The notes beneath the pieces were generated by a model. That model saw nothing but the letters and a program-made list of their open reading frames with translations, was not told where the DNA came from and did not search any database. The position numbers and the translations under genes are program-made. Below are positions 6,858-45,452 of a DNA stretch of 64,000 bases, piece after piece (position 1 is the stretch's first letter; each line of letters begins with the position of its first letter). The DNA lies in the IMG/VR virus record IMGVR_UViG_3300017991_000001, positions 1 through 64,000 of that record; one strand, written 5' to 3'.

Positions 6858-6858
6858 G

Positions 6859-7551: not shown

Positions 7552-8270
7552 GGTTCCACCTCTGGGATCTCGTACCCGGCGTGCTTCATCATCCGACCAC
7601 ACTGCGCCACGCATGCCCTTATGGTAGCGGCTGATAGGTGTTTACGCCAGGTGTCAGGTTTGCCCAAATCGTCGGAAATGTGGTGGTCGCGCACGTTTGT
7701 GATGTTCTTGATGGTGTCGTTGGGCATCGTGTCGGCGTGGGCCTTGACCACCTCAGCCGAGTGCCGGCGGGCGATCTCCCTGGCTTCGGGCAGCGTCACG
7801 TGCAGGTCCAGGAAGTTGGAGACCATGCAGACGACGCGGGGCACGTCCAGGATCATCTCCTCGTACTTGATCATCAGGCAGGGCTTCCAGTGCAGCTGGT
7901 CGAAGTAGTCATCCTCGTAACGGTCCCAGCCGTCGGGGATGTACTCGCCCCACTCGCCGGTCTGGGCCGTGCAGCGCTTCTGGGCGGAGGCGGCTATGTC
8001 CAGGGGGTTGCGGTAGGTGAACAGGAACCTGGCCTCCCTCATGACGTCGACCTGCCGGCCGCGCAGCACGTAGAAGTGCACCTTGGCCAGCATGGGAGGA
8101 GGCGTCGGGTAGGTGATCACGAAGCGGCCATAGCTGTCGCGGAGGCAGTACGGGGTGGACTCAATCAGCTCCACGTCGCCGAAGTTCAGCTCCAAGAGCT
8201 CACGTGCGATGTTGTAGACCAGCGTGGACCCCGAGCGGTACATCCCGTTGCAGACCACGAATCGACTCAC
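7488..8270 (-). CDS. Sulfotransferase, tandem paralogue
   Basis: GMYRSGST, LAKVH, YRNPLDIAAS, IKYEE; GTG start inferred. Confidence 0.85.
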   Translation of the reverse strand: MSRFVVCNGMYRSGSTLVYNIARELLELNFGDVELIESTPYCLRDSYGRFVITYPTPPPMLAKVHFYVLRGRQVDVMREARFLFTYRNPLDIAASAQKRCTAQTGEWGEYIPDGWDRYEDDYFDQLHWKPCLMIKYEEMILDVPRVVCMVSNFLDLHVTLPEAREIARRHSAEVVKAHADTMPNDTIKNITNVRDHHISDDLGKPDTWRKHLSAATIRACVAQCGRMMKHAGYEIPEVEPCTSSSLSATECIEPDQPCPT

Positions 8271-9073
8271 AGCGCCCCCCTCTCTGTTTTGCTCATCAAC
8301 TCCTTGGCCCGATCCGGTTCCATCTCGCCCATGGCGACCATGAGCAGGCGCGCGTAGTTCTTCTGCCGTTCGCTGGCGTTCTCGTAGGCCCTCTTGCCAA
8401 TATAGACGGTCACGCCGTAGACCAGCAAGCCCATGATCAGGATGACCCCGATCACCGTGATCACCGCCGACATGGGCCACATGTTGACGTCGCGCCCGGC
8501 GCGCATCTCGGTCTGGAGCGTGGTTTGCATCTTCGTGAGCTTGTTCGACAAGCCCACTTGCCCCGAGGCTGTGGCGTCTGCCTGTCCCGACATGTGGCCG
8601 ACCTTGGTGTTGATATCGGACAGCGCCTTCATCGTGTTGTCCAGCTTCGCCTCCATCTTGTTGGTGACGTTGACGTTGGCCTCGAACTTGGCGTTGATCG
8701 TGTTCTCCAGGCTCGCCATGGCTGTCATGGTATTGGTCAGCTTCGTGTCGATGTCGGCTTGCATCTTATTGTCGATCTTGGCCTCCAAGTTAATCAGGCC
8801 CTTTAGCGCCACCTCCATCTTCTGGAGCTGCGCCACGATGTGGCCGGAGAGCTGGTTGCTGTTGGAGGACATGTCGGCCCGCACGCGGGCGGCGGTGTCC
8901 TCCACGATCTTGTCCGTGTCCACCTTCTCCACCGCTATTTCCGGTGCCGGCATCGAAATCTCAGGTTTGTGGTCGATGATCGTCGGGGCCATCTTGGTCT
9001 TGTTGTCGGCGATGCAGCCGGTCAGCCATATCAACAAAATCAACAACGGCATCAATGACTTGAGCTTGGGCAT
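8267..9073 (-). CDS. Lipoprotein with coiled coil and C-terminal TM helix (unimolecular spanin-like)
   Basis: Signal peptide with lipobox LTGC, long heptad-like helix, TM segment AVITVIGVILIMGLLVYGVTVYI. Confidence 0.55.
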   Translation of the reverse strand: MPKLKSLMPLLILLIWLTGCIADNKTKMAPTIIDHKPEISMPAPEIAVEKVDTDKIVEDTAARVRADMSSNSNQLSGHIVAQLQKMEVALKGLINLEAKIDNKMQADIDTKLTNTMTAMASLENTINAKFEANVNVTNKMEAKLDNTMKALSDINTKVGHMSGQADATASGQVGLSNKLTKMQTTLQTEMRAGRDVNMWPMSAVITVIGVILIMGLLVYGVTVYIGKRAYENASERQKNYARLLMVAMGEMEPDRAKELMSKTERGAL

Positions 9074-9540
9074 GGGTACTCTCCCTGGTGGGTTCCGGTG
9101 TGAATGGCATTCTACCTCGTAGTTCCTCTCCGCATATCGAAAATCTTGGTGCTTCCCGACAGCTAAAACAAACGCCCCGGCGCGTTAGTATTTCCTAATG
9201 CCGATTGGCCCGTGGCCAGCCGGTAAAAGCGTAGAGAACGTGGTTAACCGTGGTTTTCGTGGAGGTGAACGTGGAGAAGAGACAGCGTCCCCTACCGATG
9301 AAGCGCCGGATGCAAATGCGCCGGAAGCTGTTTCGTGACATCGCTGAGTTCCTCAAGAAGCTTCGCTGAAGCTTGAGGGGCTTGCGGTGAGGGCACGCGG
9401 AAAGGAGGGCACTCGTTGAATCGTAGTTGCTCGAACCGGAGTCAGCCCGTCCCGGTTCGGGGCCGCAGACAAGGGCAAACCTGCCCCGCCGGGGCAGGTT
9501 ATACACTTTCTCGCTAACGAACGAACGGAAGGAGAAGGAG

Positions 9541-9888
9541 ATGAAAAAGGTGAAGAAAAAGAAGGGCAAGGAGTTCGAGCTGATCGTGTTGGCGCTCCTC
9601 GGACACTTGGGCGAGTTCATGAAGGGGTTTCTGTCCTTCCAGAAGAAGGAGGACAAGCGCGCTCAGGAACGCCACCAACTCGAGATGCAGAACTGCGCTC
9701 GGGACATCAGGCTCAAGGACCTCGAGATCGAGCGCCTTGAGGCGGAGGTCAGCAAGACCCGCAAGTCCGCGTCCGTGAAGGGCAAGAAGGAAAAGAAGTC
9801 CAAGAAGGACAAGAAGGCCAAGAACAACGGCAAAACGCCTGAGGATATCACCGTCCCCGAGCGGGGCGGCGTTGCCACCACGGAATGA
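9541..9888 (+). CDS. Hypothetical Lys-rich coiled-coil protein
   Basis: AAGGAG RBS before ATG 9541; 115 aa. Confidence 0.6.
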   Translation: MKKVKKKKGKEFELIVLALLGHLGEFMKGFLSFQKKEDKRAQERHQLEMQNCARDIRLKDLEIERLEAEVSKTRKSASVKGKKEKKSKKDKKAKNNGKTPEDITVPERGGVATTE

Positions 9889-9902
9889 TCCTCGGAGGCG
9901 AT

Positions 9903-9951
9903 TGGCCCCCGGCGCGACGACTCGCGCCGGGGCCATCGCGCGTTTTCCTTT
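9903..9951. terminator. Hairpin between convergent genes
   Basis: TGGCCCCCGGCGCGA / TCGCGCCGGGGCCA stem followed by a T-rich tract. Confidence 0.55.
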
Positions 9952-9955
9952 TCTA

Positions 9956-11779
9956 TCAGTAGGGGTCGCGGAACGCGTTGGGGGGTTCGGCCAGGTTGAG
10001 CTGCTCCTCGGTCAGCTTGATGCCCTGGACCTCGGACAGGTCGGGGTACCGCCGCGTGTAGTGCCAGATGGCGCAGGAGCCGTAGTTGAGCGCGTGGGCG
10101 AAGTCGTCCGGCATCTTGGGTCGCCGTATGATGGTGTAGACATCCTGGCGCCGGGCGACCTCCTTGCGCTCCTCGATGAGGTTGAGCAGGTCGGAGGTGA
10201 TGTTCTTGCTGGACTCGTACTCCGGGAGCAGGATCTTGCAGGCCTTGACACACACGGCCTGCAGGACCAGCGAGCGGGGTTTGTCCAGCTGGTAATAGCC
10301 CCTGAGCTCCCCTTCCGCCGGTTTCTTGTACACGACCACGTCCCGTGTGGGCAGGTACATGTACATGAAGGGCACGATCCGGTCGAGGGGCAGCCCGGCC
10401 TGTATCATCAGGGTTTCGCGCACGCCGCCGGCCCCGCCGTAGTCATGCGCGAAGAACATGCAGCCCGCTTCCCGATAGAGGTCCAGCAGGCGCCGGGCCT
10501 CCCAGTCGTGGGCCGCCGCCAGGGGGAAGCGCTCGCAGAAGTGGCATTCCAGCCCGCCGCCGATGGGGTTGAGACCGACAAGTGCAACGGACGTAAAGGA
10601 GGTGCCCTCCTCCTGACCGCCGCCGCCCCAGTCCACGCCCATGGCACGGATGGGGCAGCGGCGGAACTTGTCGATCATCCTGTCGAACTCGTTGGGCCCC
10701 AGGCGCGAGGCGCGCTTGATGTCGGTGACGGTGGTCAGGTTGACGCCCACGTCGGCCGACTCGCCGAGGACCTCGTTGAGGAACCTCGACTCGTTGTACC
10801 CGAACTTGCCGTCCCGCTTGGCGATCAGCTCGCCCCACTTCTCCTCGTCGCGGTAGTGCGAGGGGACGATGGGCTGCGGGACGTGGAAGCCCCAGAAGTC
10901 GGCGTGCTCGTCGGCGTCGGTGTGGTACCAGTGGCCGTTGGCGGCGTCGATGAGGTTCTTGCATTTGGCGCAGCACAGGCCCTTGCGCTCGATCATCTTC
11001 ATGAGGTCGGCCTGGAAGCAGGCCATGTTCCAGTAGCCGCAGTGGGTGCATTTGGTGACCCATTCGGCCTTGGAGGAGTCCTGCCACAGCGCCTCGATGG
11101 TGTTGTCGAGCGTCTTGGGCGTGCCGGAGTAGGAGGAGGCGCGGATCTTGGAATACGACATGCACTCCCGGATGATCGGGATGAAGTCGTAGTCCATGTC
11201 CTGGATCTCGTCGTGGTCGATGATGTCGCAGGCGATGCCGCGGATGCGGTCGCAGTCCAACAGCGCGAAGGAGAAGAACAGCATGCTCCCGTTCGCGAAG
11301 GACCGCTGCAGCACCGCGTTGGTGGCCGAGGTGTCGACCAGGAACCTGGAGATCGGGCTGTTCTTGATGAACGGCCGGACGTAGTTGTTGGAGAGGCGCC
11401 GGATCTGTTCGTATCGGGGGGTCACGAGCAGGGTCCGCAGGTAGGGGTGGCCGGCCGAACGCATGACGCAATTCGCCGAGAGCGTCGCGCTTTTGCCCAC
11501 CTGCCGCGCGCACTTGAGCAGCATGCGCCTGGGGATGCCCACCTTGAAGACCGGCTCCATGAAGAAGTGGTTCTCAAGGGTGTAGGGGCGCCCGTCCAGG
11601 GAGAGCAGGCCCAGCACGGGTACCAGCGTGTCGGGGTTGCGGTTACGCAGGATGTGCATCACCTGCATCACGTCGGCGAGCGAGACCTGCTCGCCGCTTT
11701 GGAAGGTATCGATGACGTTTTGTACGGACTCGGGCAGCTGGGTCTCTACCGACTCGGCAAGTGAGGAGGCTGTATCCAT
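9956..11779 (-). CDS. terL: Terminase large subunit (GpA-like)
   Basis: Walker A KCARQVGKS, Walker B DHDEIQD, GTP coupling motif, CxxC pairs, nuclease motifs MGVDWGG and PDDFAHALNY. Confidence 0.92.
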   Translation of the reverse strand: MDTASSLAESVETQLPESVQNVIDTFQSGEQVSLADVMQVMHILRNRNPDTLVPVLGLLSLDGRPYTLENHFFMEPVFKVGIPRRMLLKCARQVGKSATLSANCVMRSAGHPYLRTLLVTPRYEQIRRLSNNYVRPFIKNSPISRFLVDTSATNAVLQRSFANGSMLFFSFALLDCDRIRGIACDIIDHDEIQDMDYDFIPIIRECMSYSKIRASSYSGTPKTLDNTIEALWQDSSKAEWVTKCTHCGYWNMACFQADLMKMIERKGLCCAKCKNLIDAANGHWYHTDADEHADFWGFHVPQPIVPSHYRDEEKWGELIAKRDGKFGYNESRFLNEVLGESADVGVNLTTVTDIKRASRLGPNEFDRMIDKFRRCPIRAMGVDWGGGGQEEGTSFTSVALVGLNPIGGGLECHFCERFPLAAAHDWEARRLLDLYREAGCMFFAHDYGGAGGVRETLMIQAGLPLDRIVPFMYMYLPTRDVVVYKKPAEGELRGYYQLDKPRSLVLQAVCVKACKILLPEYESSKNITSDLLNLIEERKEVARRQDVYTIIRRPKMPDDFAHALNYGSCAIWHYTRRYPDLSEVQGIKLTEEQLNLAEPPNAFRDPY

Positions 11780-30081: not shown

Positions 30082-31158
30082 TTGCCAAAGAAAATCCTGT
30101 TCGCGAGTGACACGCATCTGCACCCCACCATCTGGGACGACCTGCCCCAGGTGTGGGGCGATGCGTACAGAGCGTTCGACCAGCTGTGCCTGCGGGCGGT
30201 GGAGGACGAGGACATCACTTCCGTCTTCCTGGGCGGCGACGTCTTCGACCGCCAGCCGGAGTCCTGCGCGATGGAGTGTTTCCTGCGCAACATGGACCGG
30301 CTGCAGGACGTGAACAAGCCCGTCTTCGCGATCCAGGGCCAGCACGGCAAGGTGCGCACCCGGGGACGCGACGACGTGGTGCCGTGGCCGTCGGTGCACG
30401 GCTGGGTGAAGCAGATGAGCCACAAGCCCTTCGGGTTGCTGCCCAAGGTCAAGGCGGTGGGCATCGATCACTGCGGGCCGGACGACCTGCAGAAGAAGCT
30501 CTCCCGCATCTCGAAGCAGGCCGCGGTGGTCTTCATGCACCAGATGATCAAGGGCGGCGTGCCCCTGATCAAGGACGTGCAGAACTGGGACTTCGATCCC
30601 GAGTGGCTGCCGGAAAGCGTGAAGCTGGTGCTGGCCGGCGACCTGCACGTGCCGGCCGAGTTCAACATCCCCGGCGGCAAGCTGGTCTACAACGGGGCCA
30701 CGGTGCTGCGGAGCATCGACGAGCCCGAGGAGAAGTACTTCACCGTGGTGAGCGAGGAGCTGACCTTCGAGCGGGTGCGCATCAACAGCCGCGTCTTCAA
30801 GCGCGCCTCGGTGTTCGCGGAGAAGGCGCTGCAGCAGGCCATGGAGGCCACGAGCAAGATGCCGCCCGAGTCCGTGTTGGAGGTGAAGTACGACCCGCGC
30901 ATCGACGGGGTGGAGCAGAAGCTGAGGGACGCCAATGAGGCCATCCACTTCCGGTTCGTGCCGGTGCCCACGGTGGGCGTGGTGGTGGGCGAGGGCGAGC
31001 TGGAGCTGCCCGACAACGTGAGTCCCGAAGGGTTCCTGGACGAGTTCGTGGACCGGGAACAGCGTCCCGTGCTGCATTCGTTCCTGTTTCAGATGATCAC
31101 GGCGCAGAACGAACGGGACGAGCTGGAACGTCAACGCATGGAGATCCTCGGGGAATGA
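30082..31158 (+). CDS. SbcD/Mre11-like metallophosphoesterase nuclease
   Basis: SDTHL, GGDVFD, GQHG, FMHQ and GDLH motifs. Confidence 0.9.
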   Translation: MPKKILFASDTHLHPTIWDDLPQVWGDAYRAFDQLCLRAVEDEDITSVFLGGDVFDRQPESCAMECFLRNMDRLQDVNKPVFAIQGQHGKVRTRGRDDVVPWPSVHGWVKQMSHKPFGLLPKVKAVGIDHCGPDDLQKKLSRISKQAAVVFMHQMIKGGVPLIKDVQNWDFDPEWLPESVKLVLAGDLHVPAEFNIPGGKLVYNGATVLRSIDEPEEKYFTVVSEELTFERVRINSRVFKRASVFAEKALQQAMEATSKMPPESVLEVKYDPRIDGVEQKLRDANEAIHFRFVPVPTVGVVVGEGELELPDNVSPEGFLDEFVDREQRPVLHSFLFQMITAQNERDELERQRMEILGE

Positions 31159-33263
31159 TCATTAACCGCGTAACAATGCAAAACTTCTGTCAGCACAAGG
31201 ACAGGAAGGAGGACCTCGGTCCCGGCATGATCGGGATCGTGGGCAAGAACGGCAACGGCAAGAGCAACCTGGTGAGGTCCATGCTGTTCGGCCTCAGCGG
31301 TGATTCGGGCGGGGCCGGCACGAAGGCGGACGACATCACCAACGGCGAGAAGGGCGGCCACGTGCGTGTCGACTTCACGGTGGGGGACGAGAGCGGCTTC
31401 ATCAAGCGCGACCTGAAGACGTCCCGCACGCAGCTGAAGTTCGGGGAGGAGGACCATCGCTCCGCCCGCGAGGCGGACAAGGTCATCTACAACCTGATGC
31501 AGATCAGCCCCAAGCTGTTGCGCGAGGTGGTCTTCGTGGGGCAGGGGCGGATCGAGAGCATGCTGTTCGAGAAGCCTGCCGAGCGGGGCAAGGCCTTCGC
31601 GGCGCTCTTTGGCACCGACCGCATGGAGCGCATCCGGGACCTGCTTCAGCAGGACCTGACGAAGGTGCAGGCCGTCTCCAACGCCGAGGCGATCGAGCTG
31701 GCCCGCAACGAGAAGCAGAGCCTGGAGAAGCAGCTGGCGGATCATCAGAGCACGCTGACGCTGCTGGGACACAAGACGCTCACCCTGGAGGAGGTCAGGC
31801 GGGCGGAGGGCCTGATCGACGTCTACAAGGAGCGCAACCGGGCACAGGCCACGCTGAACGAAGCCGAGCAGCAACTGGCCGGCCTGAAGCGTACGCGCGA
31901 GGAGTTGCAGAAGACTTCCGCGGCCAAGGCGGAGAAGCGCCGCAAGGGCGGCGAGGTGCTGCAGGAACTGCAGGGCGAGTACGACGCGGCCAAGGCGCGC
32001 ATCCAGAACGCGGACAAACTGCAATCGGTGCAAGAGCGGAGGGTCTTCCTGCAGCACGAGATCGACCGCTGCGTGAAGCGTCTCGAGGCGCCGCTGCCCA
32101 AGAAGTGGTCGGAGGAGGACGAAGAGAAGCTCAAGCAGCACAAGGCGGACATCGACAGACTGAACGAGCCGGTGGCCAACGCGCGCAAGGTGGTCGCTTC
32201 ACTGGACCAGGGCGCGGCCACGTGTCCGACCTGCACGCAGCCCGTGCCGCCGGACTTCGTCGAGCAGCAGATGGCCGTCCTGCAGCACGACGGCAACCTT
32301 CTGCAAAACGCCGAGCAGCTCCACGCCGCGCTGAACGACCGGAGGATCGAGCAGGACCAGGCGGTGATGGCCGACACCAGCGAGCGCACGGAGGCGAAGA
32401 TCAAGCTCGACGCCGCGCGCGGTGAGCTGGCGCAGCTGGGCGAGGCGTCGGAGCCGGCATCGTCGGAGACGGACAAGGCGGTGGTGGCCGAGTACGAGGC
32501 GCTGCGGAAGGAGACTTCCGGTCACGAGCTGGAACTGGCCACGACGATGGGACAGCTCAAGCAGCTCGACGACAACATCCGCAACGCCGGGCAGAACGTG
32601 GAAGCCATGCGCAAGGCCCTGTGGCAGATGGACGAGGTTTCCCAGCAGGCCGCCATGGACGCCGACACCAGGTTGAAGGACCACTACGACGCGCAGTTGA
32701 GCGTCTCCGACGTGCAAGGCCAGACCAAGACGTTGGAGGAGCGGCTGCAGTCCACCAGCGAACGGCTGGAGCGCATGGAAGGGGACGAGGCGAAGATCGC
32801 CAAGCGGCTGGAGTGGCGCAAGCTGTGCGAAGAGGCGCGGATGGTGCTGCACCGCAACCACCTGCCCAACCGCGTGGCCCAGGCCTACTTGGGTTCGATC
32901 AACGCCAAGATGAACGAGTATCTGGAGGTGTTCCAGGCCCGGTACACCTGCGCGATCAGGCCGGACTTGAGCGTCAAGTGCCATTTCGGCGAGTACGAGC
33001 TGCCGGCTGAGCGGTTGTCGGGCGGCCAGCGCGTCGAGCTGGGCCTGTCGTTCCGCTTCGCGCTGTACGATCTGTTCGTGGGCCATTTGGGCCTGCTCGT
33101 CATTGACGAGCCCACGGCCTGGCTGGATGATGACCACATCGAGGCGGTGGCGCGGGTGCTGGAGCGCGTGAAGGCGCACTCCAAGTCAAAGGGGATGCAG
33201 GTGATCGTGGTCACCCACGAGCCCAGGCTGATCCCCATCTTCGACAACTTCATACAGGTGTAG
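31155..33263 (+). CDS. SbcC/Rad50-like ABC ATPase
   Basis: GKNGNGKS, zinc hook CPTC, coiled coils, LSGGQ signature, IDEPT. Confidence 0.95.
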   Translation: MIINRVTMQNFCQHKDRKEDLGPGMIGIVGKNGNGKSNLVRSMLFGLSGDSGGAGTKADDITNGEKGGHVRVDFTVGDESGFIKRDLKTSRTQLKFGEEDHRSAREADKVIYNLMQISPKLLREVVFVGQGRIESMLFEKPAERGKAFAALFGTDRMERIRDLLQQDLTKVQAVSNAEAIELARNEKQSLEKQLADHQSTLTLLGHKTLTLEEVRRAEGLIDVYKERNRAQATLNEAEQQLAGLKRTREELQKTSAAKAEKRRKGGEVLQELQGEYDAAKARIQNADKLQSVQERRVFLQHEIDRCVKRLEAPLPKKWSEEDEEKLKQHKADIDRLNEPVANARKVVASLDQGAATCPTCTQPVPPDFVEQQMAVLQHDGNLLQNAEQLHAALNDRRIEQDQAVMADTSERTEAKIKLDAARGELAQLGEASEPASSETDKAVVAEYEALRKETSGHELELATTMGQLKQLDDNIRNAGQNVEAMRKALWQMDEVSQQAAMDADTRLKDHYDAQLSVSDVQGQTKTLEERLQSTSERLERMEGDEAKIAKRLEWRKLCEEARMVLHRNHLPNRVAQAYLGSINAKMNEYLEVFQARYTCAIRPDLSVKCHFGEYELPAERLSGGQRVELGLSFRFALYDLFVGHLGLLVIDEPTAWLDDDHIEAVARVLERVKAHSKSKGMQVIVVTHEPRLIPIFDNFIQV

Positions 33264-33264
33264 C

Positions 33265-34182
33265 ATGAACTACGTCTACGCGGTTGACGAGCACAAGTAC
33301 TTCCTGAGCGACGGGCCGGGCGACACGTGCAGGCTGATGGCCCACCCGTCGCAGTCGCCGTATATCGAGGCGCTGCGCAAGCAGACGCCGACCGAGGTCG
33401 TCTCCGTCAGCGCGGTTCATCCCGAGGACAAGGACGACCCGCAAGCCGTATTGCAGGCCATGCGCGAGGCGGAGGAGGTGCCGCCCGAGCGCGGTGGTTG
33501 GCGTCCCATCAAGGATGCCGAGCTGGCGGCGCTCACCTTCTCCCGGCTGGCCGTGGACTGTACGCCTCCGATGATCAGTATGGAGCTGCAGCAGGCGATG
33601 GACACCCACCCCGTGGTGCGGGGCGGATGGATGTACGCGACGGGCGGTTTGTTGACGATGCCGGCCATGGGCCTCCTGTCCGAGATCTACGACATCCGCC
33701 GGTTCGCCCGCAAGCGGGACCCGTGGAGGGTCGACAAGCTGCCGCCCAAGAGGCTGCTCAAGTTTCTGCGGCTGCACACGCCCGTCTACATTTCGATGTA
33801 CCTGTCCGGGCAGAAGCTGGAGGACAAGGACATGCGGGCGCGCGTATCGCACCAGGCCTGGCATATGGTGTGCAGCAGGTCGGACCGTCCCTGCGATTTC
33901 CTGATGCGCGAATGCGTCATGTTCGCGGGCAAGAAGGCCACCAAGGCCGTCTTCGGCAGTCCGAGCCCGGAGGAGTACCAGGAGGCCGCCGACGTGGCCT
34001 TCGCGGCGCACTGGATGGTCACCAAGCGGTATGTCGAGTTCATGCGCCGGCTGTGGATTGCCGGCGTCTCCGAGGAGACGGAATTCACGCCGGAGACCTT
34101 CTTCTATCAGGAAGAGGAGATCGAAGGTTATAGCAGGTACATTAAGGAACTCGATAAGAGTCTTGACAACTTACATCCCTGA
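33265..34182 (+). CDS. Hypothetical protein
   Basis: 305-aa ORF immediately after sbcC. Confidence 0.7.
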   Translation: MNYVYAVDEHKYFLSDGPGDTCRLMAHPSQSPYIEALRKQTPTEVVSVSAVHPEDKDDPQAVLQAMREAEEVPPERGGWRPIKDAELAALTFSRLAVDCTPPMISMELQQAMDTHPVVRGGWMYATGGLLTMPAMGLLSEIYDIRRFARKRDPWRVDKLPPKRLLKFLRLHTPVYISMYLSGQKLEDKDMRARVSHQAWHMVCSRSDRPCDFLMRECVMFAGKKATKAVFGSPSPEEYQEAADVAFAAHWMVTKRYVEFMRRLWIAGVSEETEFTPETFFYQEEEIEGYSRYIKELDKSLDNLHP

Positions 34183-34191
34183 AGCTAACTT
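34163..34191 (+). promoter_or_regulatory. Candidate sigma70-type promoter
   Basis: TTGACA-17 nt-TAACTT upstream of the lipoprotein/glycosylase/tRNA unit. Confidence 0.55.
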
Positions 34192-34217
34192 CCCCGTCAC
34201 AAACCAGGAGAGAACCG

Positions 34218-34535
34218 ATGAGGAAACTGAGCTGGTTGGTCCCGGTCGCACTGGTCCTGGTGTTCTCGGGGTGTGCGAAGGACGCGCGGATCAAGCGGGC
34301 CGCCTCGCTGTCGAACACCAAGATGAAGGTGGAGGCGGCGGAGTACTGGGCGGCGACCACGCCGGAGAAGAAGCTGGAGATCGCCGACCACCACTTCCGT
34401 ACGATGCCGAAGTTCACCCAGGTGGTGGACGACTACATGCACGGGCGGGAGCCCAGCGGGCCGACCCCCGACGAGGTGAAGGCGGAAGTGAAGAGGCGGA
34501 AGACCAAAGCCGAGCTGATACGGGTCAACGAATGA
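34218..34535 (+). CDS. Small lipoprotein
   Basis: Signal peptide with lipobox FSGC. Confidence 0.7.
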   Translation: MRKLSWLVPVALVLVFSGCAKDARIKRAASLSNTKMKVEAAEYWAATTPEKKLEIADHHFRTMPKFTQVVDDYMHGREPSGPTPDEVKAEVKRRKTKAELIRVNE

Positions 34536-35116
34536 TCAACTTCGAGCGGTGCTACGACCGTTCGGACGAGGACCTCCAGCGGTTCCTGATCTTCTGCATC
34601 TGCGTTGCCGGCAAGAACGCCAAGACCGTCGACGCGAAGGTGTGCGAGTTTCTGGAGCCGTGCGAACACCGCAGGGAGACACCCTTCGAGTTCCTGCGGT
34701 ACCTGGTCAACATCGAGCGCTTGGACTTCGCGCTCGCGAAGGTCAAGATGGGGAAGTACAGGCTGCTCGAGCGGTCGTTTACGTACCTGGTCGAGAAAGA
34801 GTTGGACCTCCGGTCTTGTACGGTCGATCAGCTGGAAATGGTGCCCGGCATCGGTCCCAAGACCGCGAGGTTCTTTCTGCTGTACACGCGGGAGTACTTC
34901 CGGGGGGCGGTACTCGACACGCACGTGCTCCAGCACCTGGTGGCTTGCGGATGCAAGAAGGTGCCGAAGCAGACACCGCAGGACCCGAAGGTGTACCGGA
35001 AGTGGGAGGCGGTCGTGCTGGAGCTGGCCGCGGCCAACGGAATGGACCCGGCCGAGTACGACAACGAGATCTGGAAGAGCCGGAGCCCCTCAGCGGAGTT
35101 GGGGGTGTCTCCGTAG
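34532..35116 (+). CDS. HhH-GPD DNA glycosylase-like protein (OGG-like)
   Basis: LEMVPGIGPKTARFFL HhH motif with catalytic Lys; AVLDTHVL. Confidence 0.85.
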   Translation: MINFERCYDRSDEDLQRFLIFCICVAGKNAKTVDAKVCEFLEPCEHRRETPFEFLRYLVNIERLDFALAKVKMGKYRLLERSFTYLVEKELDLRSCTVDQLEMVPGIGPKTARFFLLYTREYFRGAVLDTHVLQHLVACGCKKVPKQTPQDPKVYRKWEAVVLELAAANGMDPAEYDNEIWKSRSPSAELGVSP

Positions 35117-35179
35117 CTCAACAGGCAGAGCGACGCTCTCTAAAAGCGGTGGTTCCGGGTTCGAGTCCCGGCGGAGGCA
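35107..35179 (+). tRNA. Amber suppressor tRNA (anticodon CUA), CCA not encoded
   Basis: Acceptor GTCTCCG/CGGAGGC plus A73; D-arm GCTC/GAGC; anticodon loop CTCTAAA; T-arm CCGGG-TTCGAGT-CCCGG. Confidence 0.9.
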
Positions 35180-35308
35180 TTTATCGTCGATTATTGGTGT
35201 AGTCAGTGCGGAAAGCCGATTTACAGCGGCAGTCGATTAGTCTGTGATGATTGCAAAGATGCCAGGTACTTCGGGGATAAAACTCCGCAGGGGGAAGATC
35301 TCCAAACC

Positions 35309-35971
35309 ATGAAAGGAAGGGGCGACGTGAGCGATCCATTACCCTACGTTCGCATTGGCGACGAGAAGACGAGGAACGGGGTGGAAGTGACCGTGTTGGA
35401 GGCGAACGTGGGGGGCCTGTTCGCGCTCAAGCAGATCATCGACGAACACATTCGCCGCCGTAGCAAACTCAAGCAGGACGGGCACGACCCCGCGAAAATG
35501 CCCGTTCGGTACGCCACACCGATCGTCTCCAGGGGCGCTCGCGGCGCGCGGACGTTCGAGCTGGTGCTGGACAACGACGGCGATTTCCCGAAAGAGGAGG
35601 AAGCACGCGTGGTGGATCAGGAGAAGTTGACAGCCGAAGACGGCGTCGTGAAAGCGAACGCGGTGACGACGGGCAGGACGGATTGCAGCAGCGAGAACGA
35701 GGCCAACAAGCCCAAGACGCTGGTTCCTTTTGCCAGTCTGCCGATAGGCGGACAGCGCGAGGAGATGCACCGGAAAGTGGACAACTGGTTCATGCATCAC
35801 CCGCCCAAGAATGACCAGGAAGCACGCTACCAGAAGCTGCGCTGCAAGTTCCGGGCGCTGGCGCACGATATCGTCGATATGACGCCGCCGTGTGCCGACC
35901 AGACCGTCGCGCTCAGGAAGCTGCAGGCGGCCAACATGGCGGTCAACGTAACGATCGCCTGCAACGAATAA
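35309..35971 (+). CDS. Protein with a C-terminal Acb2/Tad1-like helical hairpin (nucleotide-signal sponge candidate)
   Basis: C-terminal NWFMHHPP..Q..RY..LR..F..LA..I..TP..DQTVALRKLQAANMAVNVTIACNE pattern. Confidence 0.6.
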   Translation: MKGRGDVSDPLPYVRIGDEKTRNGVEVTVLEANVGGLFALKQIIDEHIRRRSKLKQDGHDPAKMPVRYATPIVSRGARGARTFELVLDNDGDFPKEEEARVVDQEKLTAEDGVVKANAVTTGRTDCSSENEANKPKTLVPFASLPIGGQREEMHRKVDNWFMHHPPKNDQEARYQKLRCKFRALAHDIVDMTPPCADQTVALRKLQAANMAVNVTIACNE

Positions 35972-35974
35972 CGT

Positions 35975-36049
35975 CCGGGGGGTGGGGTTACGTGCCCCCA
36001 CCTTTTGCGCGCACGTAAGGGTGACAGGTCGTGCTGACCCCCCGGTCCA
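35975..36049 (+). ncRNA. Degenerate tRNA-like 75-nt RNA ending in CCA
   Basis: CCGGGG/CCCCGG closing stem plus T-CCA; three internal hairpins; no canonical TTCRA loop. Confidence 0.45.
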
Positions 36050-36064
36050 CTTTAGGAGGCAGAG

Positions 36065-36568
36065 ATGCCCGAAGAGACCAAACAGGACCAGGCTCCCGAG
36101 GTGGGAGCGGACAGCGATCCCGGCGATCCGCTGGCGCAGCTGAGACAGCACATGAACGCCGGCAAGGGCAAGGAGGCTTCGCCGCCGGCGCCCCTCTCGG
36201 CCGCCGCGGCATACGACCGGCTGGTGAGCGAGGGTGACCGTTCGGCGCCTCCGCCTGTCGAAGAGGCGCCGCCCGAACCGCCCGTGGCACAGCTATACGA
36301 CGCGGCCGTGGCGGCAGCGCCCAAGGGCAGTCCCCCGAGTTTCAAGGACTGGGCCGGCAACCTGGACGAGGCCGAGCTGTCGTCCATGGAGGGCAACGTC
36401 CAGGACTTCCTCCGCGTGGTGCGAGCGGACAACAAGTTCCCGGGGCAGCCCACCAAGCCCGGACCCATCGTCATGTACCTGCAGCAGGCGCGCGTGCAAC
36501 AGCGCGTGATCGACGTGGCGCTGGAGGCGTTCCAGGTTTACAAGCGCGACATGGATTTGAGGCAGTAA
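36065..36568 (+). CDS. Hypothetical protein
   Basis: AGGAGG RBS; 167 aa. Confidence 0.7.
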   Translation: MPEETKQDQAPEVGADSDPGDPLAQLRQHMNAGKGKEASPPAPLSAAAAYDRLVSEGDRSAPPPVEEAPPEPPVAQLYDAAVAAAPKGSPPSFKDWAGNLDEAELSSMEGNVQDFLRVVRADNKFPGQPTKPGPIVMYLQQARVQQRVIDVALEAFQVYKRDMDLRQ

Positions 36569-41392: not shown

Positions 41393-42451
41393 ATGCTGAA
41401 TCCACGACTTTTCAAGTCGTTGGCCGATCGCTTCGGGAAGGTGAGGATCGCCAACGAAGGGGAGCGCATGCTCGTCAAGGAGGTGCCCGACGCCAAGCGT
41501 GAGGGCAGGACGCGCGAGATCCCCGAGACGTCCGGTGAGTACTACCGGGTCAACTGCCCCTACTGTCAGGACACCAAGGGTCGGCTGTGGATCAACCACC
41601 GCTGGAACACAAAGACGGCCGACGGCCGTCCGTGGGGCTGGTGGCTGGCGGTGTGCTACAACGAGAACTGCAACCTGAGCAGGCTGCGGGACGAGCTGGA
41701 GCTGTACCTGGTGGACAAGCCCACGATCAAGCGGGCCCACAAGGAGGCGTTCCAGAAGACGGTGCGGTTCAAGGAGGTGGCGTTGCCGGGGCGGTGCGTG
41801 CCGGTCTCGGGGCTGGAACCGGGACATCCGGCGAGGGCCTACCTCGCCAGGCGCAACTTCGACCCCTACGAGCTGGTGAAGCTTTTTGCCGTCCATTATT
41901 GCGTGGACGTGCCGGAGGACCCCGACGGGTTCGTGCCCGACACCAAGTGGCACGCGCGCATGGTGCGGGGGCGGCTGGTCATACCCATCTACCGGCTGGG
42001 CAAGCTGGTGGGCTGGCAGACCCGGGCCATCGACGACGAGTCGCATCCGAAGTACTACACGATGCCGGGCCTGAAGAAGCAGCACCTCATCTACAACGGC
42101 GACATGTGCCGCACCTACGACTTCGGCGTGGTGGTCGAGGGCGCCACCGACGTGTGGCGCGTGGGACCGCGCGGCGGCGGGGTGCTGGGCAAGGAGATCA
42201 GCTACTACCAGCGCCAGCTCATCTCGGCGTACTGGGGGGACGGGGCCATGTGCCTGCTGTTGGACCCCGAGGCGCTCGAGGACATCGACAAGGTCAACAA
42301 GATGATCAACCTCCGCGACGGCTTCAAGTGGGGCGCGTTCGCGTTGAGGCTCGCGCCGGGCCAGGACCCCGGCGGTATGGATCGATCCGATTTGTGGAGA
42401 CTCATATCAAGCTATGCTCGCACCAGGGGCATCCAACTCCTCTCTGTGTGA
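41393..42451 (+). CDS. DNA primase
   Basis: CPYC...CYNENC Zn finger, GRLVIPI, GWQTR, TOPRIM VVEGATD, DPG. Confidence 0.88.
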   Translation: MLNPRLFKSLADRFGKVRIANEGERMLVKEVPDAKREGRTREIPETSGEYYRVNCPYCQDTKGRLWINHRWNTKTADGRPWGWWLAVCYNENCNLSRLRDELELYLVDKPTIKRAHKEAFQKTVRFKEVALPGRCVPVSGLEPGHPARAYLARRNFDPYELVKLFAVHYCVDVPEDPDGFVPDTKWHARMVRGRLVIPIYRLGKLVGWQTRAIDDESHPKYYTMPGLKKQHLIYNGDMCRTYDFGVVVEGATDVWRVGPRGGGVLGKEISYYQRQLISAYWGDGAMCLLLDPEALEDIDKVNKMINLRDGFKWGAFALRLAPGQDPGGMDRSDLWRLISSYARTRGIQLLSV

Positions 42452-45400
42452 TCTGGACCACGTGGCGCTTGACCGGTTTCCGCTGACGGAGACCTACGAG
42501 CGCGCGAAGACGGAGTGGGGCTGTTTGAAAGAGGAGGAGGTGGCACGCACGCTCTTGTGGGGCGGCGGGATGGCGTCGTGGCTCTCCGTGGCCGACGGCA
42601 AGGACCGCGTCTCGCCGGTGCGCTGGGTGACGGGCACCCACATCGGCAACGGCACGCCGGGGCCCTATCCCCATTACGACGTGATGGTGGTGGGCAAGAT
42701 GCCCGGCGCCGAGGAGATCATGAAGGGCCGGGTGCTGTGCGGCAAGTCGGGGCAGCTGTTGTTGAAGGCCGCCATGGCGCGGGGCTGCCACTACCTGATC
42801 AGCAACGCCTACGGCACCAACGTGTGCCGCTTCGCGCCGCCCGACGGGAGCAGCAACCTCAAGCCCGCCCATGTCAAGGACTGCATGCCCATGCTCGCCC
42901 AGGAGCTGGCGATCAACAATCCCAAGTACGTGTTGCTATTGGGTACCGACGCGGTGAAGGCCTTCTTCGGCAACAAGTTCAACCTGTCGAAGGTGCGCAG
43001 CCACTGTTTCGTGCTGCCCACCCCGTACGCGCTGGGCGAGGAGCCGACCGACGCCGACATCCTGACCAACGAGGCCTACGACGCCGGCGTCAAGATCTAC
43101 GCCACCATCCACCCCGCGGCCGTGCTGCGCGAGATCGGGTTGCAGGCGGGCCTGGAGCGGGACCTGGAGCGGTTCGCCGGCCTGGTGTCCGGCGCGTTCC
43201 GCGGCAACAGCACCATCCAGCAGGACACGTACTACCACTACGTCCACCAGCACGCGCCCCTGAAGCACATCATCGACCAGATCCTCGCCGCCGGCATACG
43301 CGAGATCGCGGTCGACTGCGAGTGGGGCGGCACCTTCCCCACGGGTTCCCTGCGCACCATCCAGTTCTGCTGGGCGCCGAGGGAGGTGTGCGTCGTGATC
43401 CTGCGGCGCCAGCACATGCACGACGCCCAGCAACCGGGCGAGCGGGCGAAGATGATGATGGAGCTCAAGCGGCTCTTCCACCATCCCGGTATGAAGATCG
43501 TGGGCCACAACATCCGCGCTGACGCCAAGTGGCTGGCGCTGGAGGACCTGCCGATCATGGATCGGGTCAGCTTCGATACGATGCTGGCCGACCACATCCT
43601 GAACGAGAACGCCGAGCACGGGTTGGAGGAGTGCGCGGTCCGCATGACGGACATGGGCCGGTACGACCTGCCGCTGAAGAAGTGGCTCTCGGCCAACCCG
43701 CAGCCCAAGCACGCCGGCTTCGCCGAGGTGCCGGACGACATCCTGCACCCCTACTGCGCCTGCGACCCCGACGCGACCTTCCGGCTGATCGAGCCGCTGC
43801 GCAAGCGCCTGGCCCAGCCCGACCTGTCGAGGGTGCGCCACTGCTACGAGAAGATCGTGCTGCCTTGCATGCAGCCCGTGCACGAGATCGAGATGAACGG
43901 GTTGGCCGTGGACCAGGACCGCATGGAGGGCCTGGTATGGACCTACGACACCAAGAAGCGCGAGCTGATCGATCACCTGCGCGACCTCATCGGCGACCCG
44001 TACTTCAACTTCCGCTCCTACCCCCAAGTCTCCCGCCTGCTGTTCGGTAAGATCCACGAGGGTGGGCTGGAGCTGGTCCCGTTGAAGACCACGGAGAAGC
44101 CGGCCCGCATGTGGGACGACGTGCGCCACGTGCCGGAGCACGAGCTGGAGCGCCTCAACCCGTCCACGGACTCCGAGACGCTGAAGCATCTTGCCGCCGA
44201 GTACCCGGACGTGCCCATCGTCACGGCGCTGGCGGACCTGCGGCTGGTGGACCAGGTGTCCAAGAGTTTCATGCGGACGCCCGAGGTCGATCCCTACACG
44301 GGCGACGAGATCTACGAGTCGGGCCTGGTCGGCCACGTCGACCCGGACGGGCGCGTGCGGACATCCATCAATCAGATGTCCGAGACGGGCAGGTGGAAGA
44401 GTTCAGACCCCAACCTACAGAATCTTCCGAACCGGCAGGACGCCGAGCTGAAGCGGGTGATGGGGGAGGGTGTCCACAAGATACGCAGTTGCTTCATCGC
44501 CGACGAGACGGTGGAGGCCGTCGAGCGGTTGGAGCAGGGCTGGGTGCTGGTGGAGGCCGACTTCTCGTCCGCCGAAATCTTCACGCTCGGTTACCTGTCC
44601 GACTGCCCGAAGCTGTTGATGGACGCGAAGAGCGACCTGCACGGTCGCGGCGCGGTGAACTACTTCGGGGCGCCCAGGTGGGACGGGTTCGAGCAGGGCA
44701 TCAAGCCCCCGGAGGAGTGGTTGAAGGAGCACAAGCACCTTAGGGTGGGCGCCAAGTCGGTGAACTTCGGCATCCCCTATCAGCGTGGCGCCAAGGCCGT
44801 GGCGCGCGAGGTCACCAAGGCCACCAACGGCAAGGTGTCCTGCGACACGATGCAGGCGCAGGGGTACATCAACGGGTTCTACGAGACGTACCCCGAAGTC
44901 GACAACTTCGTGGAGATGGCGAAGGCTTCCGTGATCTTCCCGGGCTATCTGGACCAGCCCTTCGGCAGACGCAGGCGCTTCTCCTCCTTCGCGGACGATT
45001 CCGCCATCGCGGCACAGCAGCGCGAGGCGGTGAACTTCCCCATTCAGAGCACGGTGGCGGACCTGCTCAACACCGCCGTCTACAACCTCTGGATGTGGCG
45101 CAACGCCTACCCGGGCGAGGCCGAGTACCGGATCGTGCTGTGCATCCATGACTCGGTCTTCCTGGAAGTGCGCGGGCCGCACGTGCCCGTGGTCGTCGAC
45201 ACCATACTCCCGGCCTGCATGCGGCACGGGGCCGTGGCTCCCATGTGGAAGCCCGAGTGTTACAAGCTGTCGAACCGTGGAAAACCGAAACGTGGAGAAC
45301 CGTTTTACACGAAACCGACGCGACCATTCTCGTTGGACATCGACGTGGAGTTGATGACGAGATGGGGATCGGAACCGGACCCGGACGAGCTGGTGCGCAG

Positions 45401-45452
45401 GGGCGTGCCGGTGAACTGGGTCGAGGCAAACGTGAAGAAAGGTGCACAGTAA
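42414..45452 (+). CDS. Family A DNA polymerase with N-terminal UDG-like and 3'-5' exonuclease domains
   Basis: UDG4-like MVVGKMPG..G.SG / TIHPAAVLR; exonuclease VDCE, GHNIRAD, YCACD; polymerase TGRWKSSDPNLQN, ADFSSAE, KSVNFGIPY, NFPIQS, IHDS. Start uncertain. Confidence 0.95.
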   Translation: MLAPGASNSSLCDLDHVALDRFPLTETYERAKTEWGCLKEEEVARTLLWGGGMASWLSVADGKDRVSPVRWVTGTHIGNGTPGPYPHYDVMVVGKMPGAEEIMKGRVLCGKSGQLLLKAAMARGCHYLISNAYGTNVCRFAPPDGSSNLKPAHVKDCMPMLAQELAINNPKYVLLLGTDAVKAFFGNKFNLSKVRSHCFVLPTPYALGEEPTDADILTNEAYDAGVKIYATIHPAAVLREIGLQAGLERDLERFAGLVSGAFRGNSTIQQDTYYHYVHQHAPLKHIIDQILAAGIREIAVDCEWGGTFPTGSLRTIQFCWAPREVCVVILRRQHMHDAQQPGERAKMMMELKRLFHHPGMKIVGHNIRADAKWLALEDLPIMDRVSFDTMLADHILNENAEHGLEECAVRMTDMGRYDLPLKKWLSANPQPKHAGFAEVPDDILHPYCACDPDATFRLIEPLRKRLAQPDLSRVRHCYEKIVLPCMQPVHEIEMNGLAVDQDRMEGLVWTYDTKKRELIDHLRDLIGDPYFNFRSYPQVSRLLFGKIHEGGLELVPLKTTEKPARMWDDVRHVPEHELERLNPSTDSETLKHLAAEYPDVPIVTALADLRLVDQVSKSFMRTPEVDPYTGDEIYESGLVGHVDPDGRVRTSINQMSETGRWKSSDPNLQNLPNRQDAELKRVMGEGVHKIRSCFIADETVEAVERLEQGWVLVEADFSSAEIFTLGYLSDCPKLLMDAKSDLHGRGAVNYFGAPRWDGFEQGIKPPEEWLKEHKHLRVGAKSVNFGIPYQRGAKAVAREVTKATNGKVSCDTMQAQGYINGFYETYPEVDNFVEMAKASVIFPGYLDQPFGRRRRFSSFADDSAIAAQQREAVNFPIQSTVADLLNTAVYNLWMWRNAYPGEAEYRIVLCIHDSVFLEVRGPHVPVVVDTILPACMRHGAVAPMWKPECYKLSNRGKPKRGEPFYTKPTRPFSLDIDVELMTRWGSEPDPDELVRRGVPVNWVEANVKKGAQ

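What the first reader, a model, noticed from the sequence alone, without database searches (positions are those of the whole stretch)
35107..35179. Amber-suppressor tRNA in a genome region that still uses TAG as stop
A canonical cloverleaf with anticodon CUA and ordinary, not tRNA-Pyl-like, arm lengths. Many genes here end at TAG (794, 4207, 33263, 47081, 52796) and long genes are uninterrupted in code 11, so this region is not recoded. The tRNA also overlaps the TAG stop of the glycosylase gene. It suggests timed read-through or TAG recoding limited to late genes elsewhere, or a counter-defence role.
Basis: partly seen in the sequence, partly recalled or inferred. Interest (0 to 1): 0.7.

Follow-up and report, generated by a model that had tools for sequence, protein, structure and literature searches.

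The report
Amber-suppressor tRNA in a standard-code jumbo phage
A complete 211-kb uncultured phage that uses the ordinary genetic code carries, as its only tRNA, a conserved tRNA that reads the stop codon UAG; such tRNAs are already known in phages, and what this one is for remains unknown.

Summary
Positions 35107-35179 (+) encode a canonical tRNA with anticodon CUA (ARAGORN; Rfam 61 bits). Its bases 8-10 form the TAG stop of the upstream Ogg-like glycosylase gene.

The window is the first 64 kb of a complete 211,084-bp IMG/VR phage, and this is its only tRNA. Contigs from six independent metagenome runs match it exactly.

The whole genome uses the standard code:
- Coding density is best under code 11.
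- TAG ends about 20% of genes, evenly along the genome.
- No gene has an in-frame TAG.
- No release factor, aminoacyl-tRNA synthetase or CCA-adding enzyme was found.

So hidden late-gene recoding is rejected, and no read-through target was found.

The tRNA has a tRNA-Trp-like body but A73 instead of G73. A distant relative (G001) carries an orthologue at the same hotspot, with compensatory stem changes and an adjacent Acb2/Tad1-hairpin gene. Closer relatives lack the whole island.

About 22 similar Trp-body CUA tRNAs occur in other IMG/VR phages. Six carriers besides this phage were tested and all fit the standard code best. The cultured Xanthomonas phage XacN1 is a published precedent.

Verdict: a real, selected, accessory amber suppressor. 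It is a new member of a known but unexplained kind, and its role is unresolved.

The parts
35107..35179 (+). tRNA gene with anticodon CUA (amber suppressor), 73 nt. Discriminator is A73 and no CCA is encoded (TTT follows). It is the only tRNA in the 211-kb genome.
   Evidence: ARAGORN; Rfam tRNA 61.1 bits; identical in contigs of six runs; orthologue in G001 with compensatory changes.
35140..35142 (+). Anticodon CTA inside the loop C-U-CUA-A-A (35138-35144). The A36-A37-A38 run is kept in all 12 aligned phage CUA tRNAs.
   Evidence: Sequence; alignment A2.
34532..35116 (+). Ogg/HhH-type DNA glycosylase-like gene (194 aa from the most likely start). Its TAG stop (35114-35116) lies inside the tRNA gene. 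Part of the accessory island.
   Evidence: Pfam PF22175 Ogg-HhH, E 4e-7; phrog_11575, E 1.7e-43; absent from syntenic relatives L010 and L013.
35309..35971 (+). 220-aa protein with a C-terminal Acb2/Tad1 hairpin domain (family of phage sponges for defence signalling nucleotides). It is linked to the CUA tRNA in both carriers.
   Evidence: Pfam PF24729, 27.5 bits against cut-off 27; phrog_1454, E 2.7e-10; G001 counterpart scores 50.7 bits and shares 44% identity over 64 aa; P0011 has 68% identity and lies next to an Ogg-HhH gene.
34183..36064 (.). Variable accessory island (glycosylase, tRNA, Acb2-like gene) between conserved replication-module genes. The closer relatives L010-L013, G002 and G003 have no tRNA here.
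   Evidence: tblastn synteny comparison; tRNA scans of relatives.
31155..33263 (+). SbcC/Rad50-like ATPase, a conserved flanking gene that ends in TAG. Orthologues have the same length (698-705 aa), so TAG is a true stop here.
   Evidence: Pfam SMC_N; homologues P0002-P0007; stop codon.
33265..34182 (+). Conserved 305-aa gene of unknown function. It marks the left border of the island and has homologues in L010, L013 and G001.
36065..36568 (+). 167-aa gene that marks the right border of the island; homologue in L010.

Best explanation
This is a genuine amber-suppressor tRNA kept by selection. It is an accessory gene of a standard-code, probably virulent, jumbo phage and is not part of a genetic-code change.

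Proposed mechanism, all inferred:
- The tRNA is transcribed with the neighbouring + strand genes.
- Host RNase P and a 3' nuclease cut it out, and the host CCA-adding enzyme completes it, because no CCA is encoded and the phage has no such enzyme.
- A host synthetase that relies on U35 charges it. Gln, Glu or Lys are the likeliest amino acids. Trp is less likely, because both main Trp determinants (C35 and G73) are gone.
- The A36-A37-A38 loop is the kind that is i6A-modified for reading U-starting codons.
- In the infected cell the tRNA competes with RF1 at UAG and causes partial read-through of UAG-terminated messages, in trans.

The phage's own genes neither need this nor show adaptation to it. 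The gene lies in a patchily distributed island with counter-defence-type genes. I therefore think the benefit is directed at the host or at competitors, or is protective: disturbing UAG termination of host or defence proteins, or buffering amber codons. It is probably not used to make a particular phage protein.

Shown: the gene, its conservation, its context, and the standard code of the genome. Inferred: expression, charging, suppression and purpose.
For: Real tRNA:
- The gene is a full canonical tRNA with anticodon CUA.
- It is unchanged in contigs from six runs.
- It is the sole tRNA of a complete genome.

Selection:
- The relative G001 (GC 52%; Mre11-like protein 30% identical, SbcC N-terminal segment (residues 1-181) 46% identical) has a CUA tRNA at the same hotspot.
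- That tRNA shares the acceptor 5' strand GUCUCCG (one 3'-strand change makes pair 2-71 U-A instead of U.G), the A73 discriminator and the CUA-A-A part of the loop.
- Pairs 30-40, 31-39 and 49-65 are changed on both sides and still pair.
- Across 12 phage CUA tRNAs, 12 of 20 pairs show compensatory changes while the anticodon loop is fixed.

Not a plain tRNA-Trp:
- 26 tRNA-Trp(CCA) genes were compared: 21 from the genome scan plus five phage ones.
- All have G73. The CUA tRNAs mostly have A73, some C or U; the one exception seen is XacN1 Sup2, which has G73.

No code change.

Accessory status:
- The island is missing from the closer relatives L010-L012 (helicase and Mre11-like protein 71% identical) and from L013, G002 and G003.
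- The Acb2/Tad1-hairpin gene sits beside the tRNA in both carriers.
- G001's island also holds MazG, a caspase-domain protein and RlaP.

Recurrence:
- About 22 Trp-body CUA tRNAs occur in IMG/VR contigs.
- The six other carriers tested (G001, G006-G010) also fit code 11 best.
- XacN1 is a published standard-code jumbo phage with two CUA tRNAs and no identified target (PMC5852040).
Against: - There is no evidence of expression, processing, aminoacylation or suppression.
- No promoter-like site was found next to the tRNA.
- The anticodon stem has an A.G mismatch at 27-43.
- An efficient suppressor would lengthen about 20% of the phage's own proteins (median 26 extra codons), and nothing in the genome offsets that cost: TAG stops are neither depleted nor backed by nearby second stops.
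- The purpose rests only on gene neighbourhood, which could simply reflect inheritance of one block.
- Only about 20% of G001's genome is available, so its late genes are untested.
- The gene caller was home-made (codon log-odds with greedy choice).
Confidence: 0.6

Rival explanations
1. Code-change device. The tRNA serves, or prepares for, TAG-to-sense recoding of some phage genes, for example late or lysis genes, as in crAss-like, Lak and Agate phages.
For: CUA tRNAs are strongly linked to TAG recoding in phages, and a standard-code relative carrying a suppressor was proposed as a precursor state (bioRxiv 10.1101/2021.08.26.457843; PMC13037316).
Against: - The complete genome fits code 11 best in every 10-kb bin except the 1-kb end bin.
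- No in-frame TAG has coding sequence on both sides, other than two ordinary gene junctions.
- TAG ends 54 of 269 genes and is not depleted.
- GC is 62.7%, the opposite of the low-GC, TAG-poor precursor state.
- There is no RF2 or synthetase.
Confidence: 0.04
2. Programmed read-through. The tRNA makes a C-terminally extended form of one or a few TAG-terminated phage proteins, as the Q-beta A1 protein is made from UGA.
For: 54 genes end in TAG. Extensions of 50 codons or more exist for some of them. The glycosylase itself would gain 8 residues.
Against: - Only 2 of 54 extensions have coding-like composition, and both are the next gene with its own SD and ATG.
- TAA- and TGA-terminated genes show as many or more such cases, 7 and 5.
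- Closer relatives manage without the tRNA.
- The same search in XacN1 found nothing.
Confidence: 0.1
3. Neutral relic. It is a phage tRNA-Trp that picked up a C35-to-U change and has no selected role.
For: The body is closest to tRNA-Trp: 84% identity over 61 nt to the tRNA-Trp of Caulobacter jumbo phages, and 74-76% to mycobacteriophage and Chloroflexota tRNA-Trp. Distant relatives G011 and G012 carry tRNA-Trp(CCA) within tRNA arrays. One base separates CCA from CUA.
Against: - CUA is kept in the diverged orthologue G001 with compensatory stem changes.
- The discriminator is A73, not the G73 of all 26 tRNA-Trp genes compared.
- It is the only tRNA retained in the genome.
- It is identical across independent samples.
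- The same design recurs in about 22 phage contigs.
Confidence: 0.08
4. Non-decoding role. The tRNA-shaped RNA acts as a decoy or inhibitor for a tRNA-targeting defence nuclease, as an RNA-processing signal that controls the overlapping glycosylase message, or as a recombination site.
For: - The 5' end overlaps the glycosylase stop, so RNase P cleavage would leave that message without a stop codon (sequence).
- The phage encodes its own tmRNA.
- The island holds counter-defence-type genes.
- The relative G002 has a tRNA-like gene with no anticodon loop.
Against: - The strict conservation of CUA plus A37-A38 across unrelated phages points to codon reading.
- In G001 the upstream gene ends in TGA just before the tRNA, with no overlap.
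- There is no integrase and no RtcB.
- The tmRNA also occurs in relatives that lack the CUA tRNA.
Confidence: 0.08

Closest known systems
The two tRNA-Sup(CUA) genes of Xanthomonas jumbo phage XacN1 (AP018399; Yoshikawa et al. 2018, PMC5852040)
   Same: A GC-rich, standard-code jumbo phage with CUA tRNAs and the identical anticodon loop CUCUAAA. In silico read-through of its amber stops found no target, as here.
   Different: The XacN1 suppressors sit among 26 ordinary tRNAs in the terminal repeats and have a different body (D loop AGCGGUCA, other stems). Here the suppressor is the only tRNA, has a Trp-type body, and lies in a replication-module island beside an Acb2/Tad1-hairpin gene.
Suppressor tRNAs of alternative-code (TAG-recoded, code 15) phages: crAss-like, Lak, Agate and recoded jumbo phages (Borges et al., 10.1101/2021.08.26.457843; PMC13037316)
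   Same: A phage-encoded CUA tRNA with no matching synthetase, presumed to be charged by a host enzyme.
   Different: Those genomes have in-frame TAG in late or lysis genes, low GC, few TAG stops and sometimes RF2. This genome has none of these features.
E. coli su+7 (supU), the tRNA-Trp-derived amber suppressor (own knowledge: Yaniv, Folk, Berg and Soll 1974)
   Same: A tRNA-Trp body with the single anticodon change CCA to CUA. In su+7 this change lets GlnRS charge the tRNA, so Gln is inserted at UAG. It is a model for how a Trp-type body can act as an amber suppressor.
   Different: su+7 keeps the Trp discriminator G73. The phage tRNA has A73 and a non-Trp acceptor helix, so its amino acid cannot be transferred from su+7.
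Trp-body CUA tRNAs in about 22 IMG/VR phage contigs found here (for example G001, G008, G010, L098, L105, L107)
   Same: The same D arm (GUAGCUCAA..GGCAGAGC), the same loop YUCUAAA, and mostly A73. The six carriers besides this phage that were tested are also standard-code.
   Different: Only G001 is a relative with the tRNA at the same hotspot and with the Acb2-like neighbour. The others are unrelated phages, some with large tRNA arrays.

Membership tests
Canonical elongator tRNA (Rfam RF00005) | Cloverleaf with 7/4/5/5-bp stems, a 7-nt anticodon loop with U33, a GTTCGA-type T loop, and a score above the gathering threshold | tested here: met
   61.1 bits against 29, full-length match, one non-standard pair at 27-43; found by ARAGORN.
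tRNA-Pyl | Unusual shape: 6-bp anticodon stem, 3-nt variable loop, small D loop, one base between acceptor and D stems | tested here: not met
   Standard arm and loop lengths. ARAGORN's 'Pyl' label follows from the anticodon alone. pylS and pylBCD were not searched for.
tRNA-Trp (bacterial or phage) | Anticodon CCA and discriminator G73, the main TrpRS determinants (own knowledge) | tested here: not met
   Anticodon is CUA and the discriminator is A73. All 21 genome tRNA-Trp genes with the same D arm, and five phage tRNA-Trp genes, have CCA and G73. Only the body is Trp-like.
Suppressor tRNA of an alternative-code (code 15) phage | In-frame TAG codons in phage genes, with better gene models when TAG is read as sense | tested here: not met
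   Density 0.86 (code 11) against 0.82 (TAG as sense). There are no TAG-specific in-frame continuations.
Suppressor tRNA of an alternative-code (code 15) phage | TAG rare as a stop codon, low GC, and often a phage RF2 or a synthetase ('code-change module') | tested here: not met
   TAG ends 54 of 269 genes and GC is 62.7%. PF00472, PF00579 and PF00749 are absent.
Amber-suppressor tRNA in a standard-code phage (XacN1 type) | CUA anticodon in an otherwise normal tRNA, a standard-code genome, and no identifiable read-through target | tested here: met
   precedent.
Functional nonsense suppressor (by activity) | The tRNA is expressed, matured, aminoacylated and inserts an amino acid at UAG | not testable with these tools
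   Only DNA contigs were available. The indirect support is conservation with compensatory changes.

The most novel reading that the evidence does not exclude
The CUA tRNA and the neighbouring Acb2/Tad1-hairpin gene form a mobile counter-defence or damage-tolerance module. The suppressor would phenotypically rescue amber codons produced in phage DNA or RNA by base damage or by host deaminase-type defences.

In this GC3-rich genome, 21% of sense codons are one substitution from TAG, against 5-6% for TAA or TGA. CAG and TGG become TAG through cytosine deamination. GAG, the commonest codon, becomes TAG through 8-oxoG-type G-to-T change, and the gene next door is an Ogg-like glycosylase.

Alternatively, the tRNA could blunt defences that act at UAG in the ribosomal A site, such as RelE-type toxins. 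Either reading would give suppressor tRNAs in standard-code phages a defined role.
Probability: 0.12. Interest if true: 0.8.

Novelty: new member of a known kind. Interest (0 to 1): 0.45.

Why it matters
Suppressor tRNAs in phages are usually read as signs of genetic-code change. This case is a clean counter-example: the genome is complete and high-GC, uses TAG as a stop in a fifth of its genes, and keeps a conserved amber suppressor as its only tRNA.

The other standard-code carriers found here, and XacN1, show that UAG-reading tRNAs have a recurrent use in phages that is independent of the code and still unexplained. A practical point follows: annotation pipelines should not switch a phage to code 15 only because a CUA tRNA is present.

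If the link to counter-defence or damage tolerance were confirmed, it would add a new type of phage accessory function. The tRNA could also be tried as a natural amber suppressor for GC-rich hosts.

Tried and rejected
- **Close relatives by single proteins.** The glycosylase and the Acb2-like protein found no relatives in IMG/VR.
- **Exact anticodon-arm scan of IMG/VR.** It gave only a chance hit that is not a tRNA.
- **Metagenome scan for D arm plus CUA loop.** It returned only the source contig Ga0180434_10000025.
- **'Relatives' search.** It is not available for a virus record, so the host stays unknown.
- **DNA polymerase tblastn against cultured phages.** At most 25% identity; there is no cultured relative.
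- **PHROGs on ten large proteins.** Mostly no match.
- **Read-through candidates at 51972 and at genome position 109563.** Rejected as TAG overlapping the next gene's Shine-Dalgarno sequence; their proteins have no informative family match.
- **In-frame TAG hits on the minus strand.** Rejected as antisense of long + strand genes.
- **attP or integration-site idea.** Rejected: no tyrosine integrase.
- **tRNA-repair arms race.** No RtcB.
- **tmRNA linked to the suppressor.** Rejected, because the tmRNA also occurs in relatives without a CUA tRNA.
- **ENA contig with P0011.** The gene order is visible but the DNA could not be fetched.
- **X9 relative.** It was seen only through read laying tables. 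No change is listed at the anticodon, but '2 more not shown' leaves a small doubt.
- **Promoter and terminator scan near the tRNA.** Nothing above chance.

Full report
**1. The observation**

ARAGORN finds exactly one tRNA in the window, at 35106-35180 (+), with anticodon cta. Rfam's tRNA model matches 35107-35179 over its full length at 61.1 bits against a gathering score of 29. The only non-standard pair is 27-43, A.G.

Read directly from the sequence, the gene is:
- acceptor GUCUCCG/CGGAGGC, with U2.G71
- D arm GCUC-AACAGGCA-GAGC
- anticodon arm ACGCU-CUCUAAA-AGCGG
- variable loop UGGUU
- T arm CCGGG-UUCGAGU-CCCGG
- discriminator A73, followed by TTT, so CCA is not encoded

These are ordinary arm lengths. 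ARAGORN's 'Pyl' label reflects only the anticodon. The upstream Ogg/HhH glycosylase-like ORF ends with TAG at 35114-35116, which is tRNA bases 8-10.

**2. Is the anticodon real?**

Contigs assembled independently by Logan from six public runs cover the tRNA without a single difference. The runs are X1, X3, X4, X5, X6 and X7: sediment from 2018 and seawater from 2021, from several studies. Some of these samples may be the source of the record, and contigs hide rare alleles. Even so, an assembly slip is excluded.

A run from another marine sediment (X9) holds a roughly 90%-identical relative. Its 831-nt contig carries the end of the glycosylase gene, the tRNA and the downstream gene. No change at the anticodon is listed.

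**3. What genome is this, and is it recoded?**

The window is the first 64 kb of an IMG/VR virus record. The record is 211,084 bp long, has direct terminal repeats, and is rated 100% complete by CheckV. GC is 62.7%.

The CUA tRNA is the only tRNA in the whole genome. There is also a tmRNA at 104426-104790.

I wrote a simple gene caller (codon log-odds, greedy choice of ORFs) and ran it under four stop-codon sets. The results argue for the standard code:
- Code 11 gives 269 genes and a coding density of 0.86. Reading TAG as sense gives 0.82.
- No 10-kb bin improves with TAG as sense, apart from the 1-kb end bin. A second training scheme gives the same ranking.
- Stops are TGA 159, TAA 56 and TAG 54.
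- The TAG share does not differ between genome regions (p = 0.64) and does not differ significantly by gene length (14% of genes of 300 aa or more, 22% of shorter ones).
- SbcC ends in TAG, and its orthologues have the same length.

Only two TAG stops are followed in frame by coding-like sequence. In both, the TAG belongs to the Shine-Dalgarno sequence of an ordinary next gene: TAGGGAGGGCACATG and TAGGAGCAGGTCATG. TAA and TGA stops show as many or more such junctions.

The genome has no RF-1-domain protein, CCA-adding enzyme, SmpB, class Ib or Ic synthetase, tyrosine integrase or RtcB.

So this is not a code-15 phage, nor one with a recoded late region, and no read-through target is visible.

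**4. What kind of tRNA is it?**

An unbiased BLAST against cultured phages gives tRNA-Trp genes as the best matches: Caulobacter jumbo phages at 84% over 61 nt, and mycobacteriophages.

A scan of one genome per prokaryote species for the same D arm followed by CUCYAAA gave 21 hits. All were tRNA-Trp(CCA) and none was CUA.

Two features are not Trp-like. Every one of these tRNA-Trp genes, and five phage tRNA-Trp genes, has discriminator G73. This tRNA has A73 and an unrelated acceptor helix. Both main TrpRS determinants (C35 and G73; own knowledge) are thus changed.

From established work on E. coli amber suppressors, U35 draws GlnRS, GluRS and LysRS, and su+7, a tRNA-Trp with CUA, inserts Gln. 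Gln, Glu or Lys is therefore more likely than Trp. This is inference only.

The A36-A37-A38 run is the motif of tRNAs that read U-starting codons and carry i6A37 (own knowledge). It fits an efficient UAG reader.

**5. Relatives**

SbcC homologues identify syntenic relatives.
- The closest (L010-L012; Mre11-like protein and helicase 71% identical, SbcC 51%) and a further one (L013) keep the gene order. They lack the glycosylase, the tRNA and the downstream gene.
- Among 52 IMG/VR loci found with an SbcC profile, one has a CUA tRNA: L048, which is record G001 (40.9 kb fragment, GC 52%). The tRNA lies about 4.6 kb downstream of the SbcC start, in the same hotspot between the p305 and p113 homologues.

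The G001 tRNA has the same acceptor 5' strand (GUCUCCG; pair 2-71 is U-A rather than U.G), A73 and CUA-A-A. Pairs 30-40 (C-G to G-C), 31-39 (U-A to A-U) and 49-65 are changed on both sides and still pair.

About 0.5 kb downstream of the G001 tRNA lies a protein with a strong Acb2/Tad1 hairpin domain (50.7 bits). It is homologous to the gene that follows the tRNA here, which scores 27.5 bits. An ENA contig encodes an Ogg-HhH protein, then a 132-nt gap, then a 68%-identical Acb2-like protein.

The tRNA is thus kept by selection. It travels with the Acb2-like gene as an accessory module with a patchy distribution.

G001's island also holds MazG, a caspase-domain protein, an HNH endonuclease and RlaP. 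The available part of G001 is standard-code.

More distant relatives (G011, G012) carry about 24 ordinary tRNAs, including Trp(CCA), plus a tmRNA, but no CUA tRNA.

**6. Is the phenomenon unique?**

No. A pattern scan of IMG/VR for the Trp-type D arm plus YUCUAAA found 24 contigs. About 22 carry such CUA tRNAs, with GC from 32 to 70% and many in genomes of 200-500 kb.

Twelve of them, aligned, show compensatory changes in 12 of 20 pairs with an invariant anticodon loop.

Six carriers other than this phage were tested. All six fit code 11 best, and most use TAG as a stop freely:

| Record | Status | TAG-ended genes |
|---|---|---|
| G008 | complete, 66 kb | 10 of 75 |
| G010 | complete, 205 kb | 7 of 247 |
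| G006 | fragment | 7 of 27 |
| G007 | fragment | 13 of 40 |
| G009 | fragment | 9 of 22 |
| G001 | fragment | 10 of 46 |

In the literature, Xanthomonas jumbo phage XacN1 has two CUA tRNAs with no identifiable target (PMC5852040). Borges et al. report suppressor tRNAs mainly in recoded phages, and occasionally in standard-code relatives as a proposed precursor state in low-GC, TAG-poor genomes. That scenario does not fit this genome.

**7. Most likely mechanism and rivals**

I conclude that this is a functional, selected amber suppressor carried as an accessory gene. It would be matured and charged by host enzymes and would compete with RF1 at UAG, giving partial read-through in trans.

The phage's own genes neither need it nor are adapted to it, and closer relatives do without it. 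Its neighbours are counter-defence-type genes. The benefit is therefore most plausibly directed at the host or at competitors, or is protective.

One quantitative point bears on a protective role. 21.2% of the phage's sense codons are one substitution from TAG, against 5.8% for TAA and 4.6% for TGA. Cytosine deamination of CAG and TGG, or G-to-T change of GAG, gives TAG. This is a lead, not evidence.

The rivals each have specific evidence against them:
- Code change: see section 3.
- Programmed read-through of a phage gene: no candidate extension was found.
- Neutral mutant tRNA-Trp: contradicted by the conserved orthologue and by A73.
- Non-decoding decoy or processing signal: contradicted by the invariant anticodon loop.

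**8. Verdict**

The feature is a new member of a known but functionally unexplained kind. It is notable as an unusually clean case: a complete genome, a sole tRNA, a conserved orthologue, and linkage to an Acb2/Tad1-type gene. Expression, charging and purpose remain untested.

Noticed in passing
Outside the window: genome 104426-104790 (L004:426-790): The phage encodes a tmRNA (Rfam 93.6 bits; tag AKTKVVAGDFGASRVALAA) but no SmpB. Distant relatives G003, G011 and G012 also carry tmRNAs, with other tags, so it is a lineage trait independent of the CUA tRNA.
   Followed up: partly
window 35100-35120: RNase P cleavage at 35106/35107 would remove the last three codons and the TAG of the glycosylase ORF, leaving a message with no stop codon. 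tRNA maturation and glycosylase translation would then exclude each other on one transcript. In G001 the upstream gene stops (TGA) just before the tRNA, so the overlap is not conserved.
   Followed up: no
window 35309-35971: A 220-aa protein with a C-terminal Acb2/Tad1 hairpin domain and an unknown 150-aa N-terminal part. It may be a sponge for defence signalling nucleotides. A 68%-identical homologue (P0011) lies on an ENA contig in the same gene order.
   Followed up: partly
window 42414-45452: A family A DNA polymerase with a uracil-DNA-glycosylase domain fused at its N terminus (UDG, 3'-5' exonuclease, polymerase). The same fusion occurs in relatives L010-L013. G001 has a 1338-aa version.
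   Followed up: no
L092:1500-1574 (record G002, a 185-kb relative): A tRNA-like gene (Rfam tRNA 46.8 bits) whose anticodon arm is replaced by a longer hairpin capped by UUCG, so it has no 7-nt anticodon loop. It is the only tRNA-like gene in that record.
   Followed up: no
L048:13014-19636 (record G001): The accessory island around the orthologous CUA tRNA holds MazG, a caspase-domain (Peptidase_C14) protein, an Acb2/Tad1-hairpin protein, a NUMOD4/HNH endonuclease and an RlaP nucleotidyltransferase.
   Followed up: partly
L107:4924-4996 (IMGVR_UViG_3300035701_000015, GC 38%): An unrelated low-GC phage contig has a CUA tRNA with exactly the acceptor helix of G001 (GUCUCCG/CGGAGAC). This suggests horizontal spread of the tRNA or a shared identity set.
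   Followed up: no
window 1-10000: Coding density is low in my gene calls (0.55), and this stretch has several of the few minus-strand genes. It is not improved by any stop-codon reassignment.
   Followed up: no
window 35113-35170, in runs X1, X4 and X5: Contigs of about 1.8 kb from another organism in the same samples carry tandem tRNA genes. One of them, a tRNA-Thr(UGU), shares the 20-nt D-arm segment exactly. This could be a lead to the host or to a co-occurring phage.
   Followed up: no
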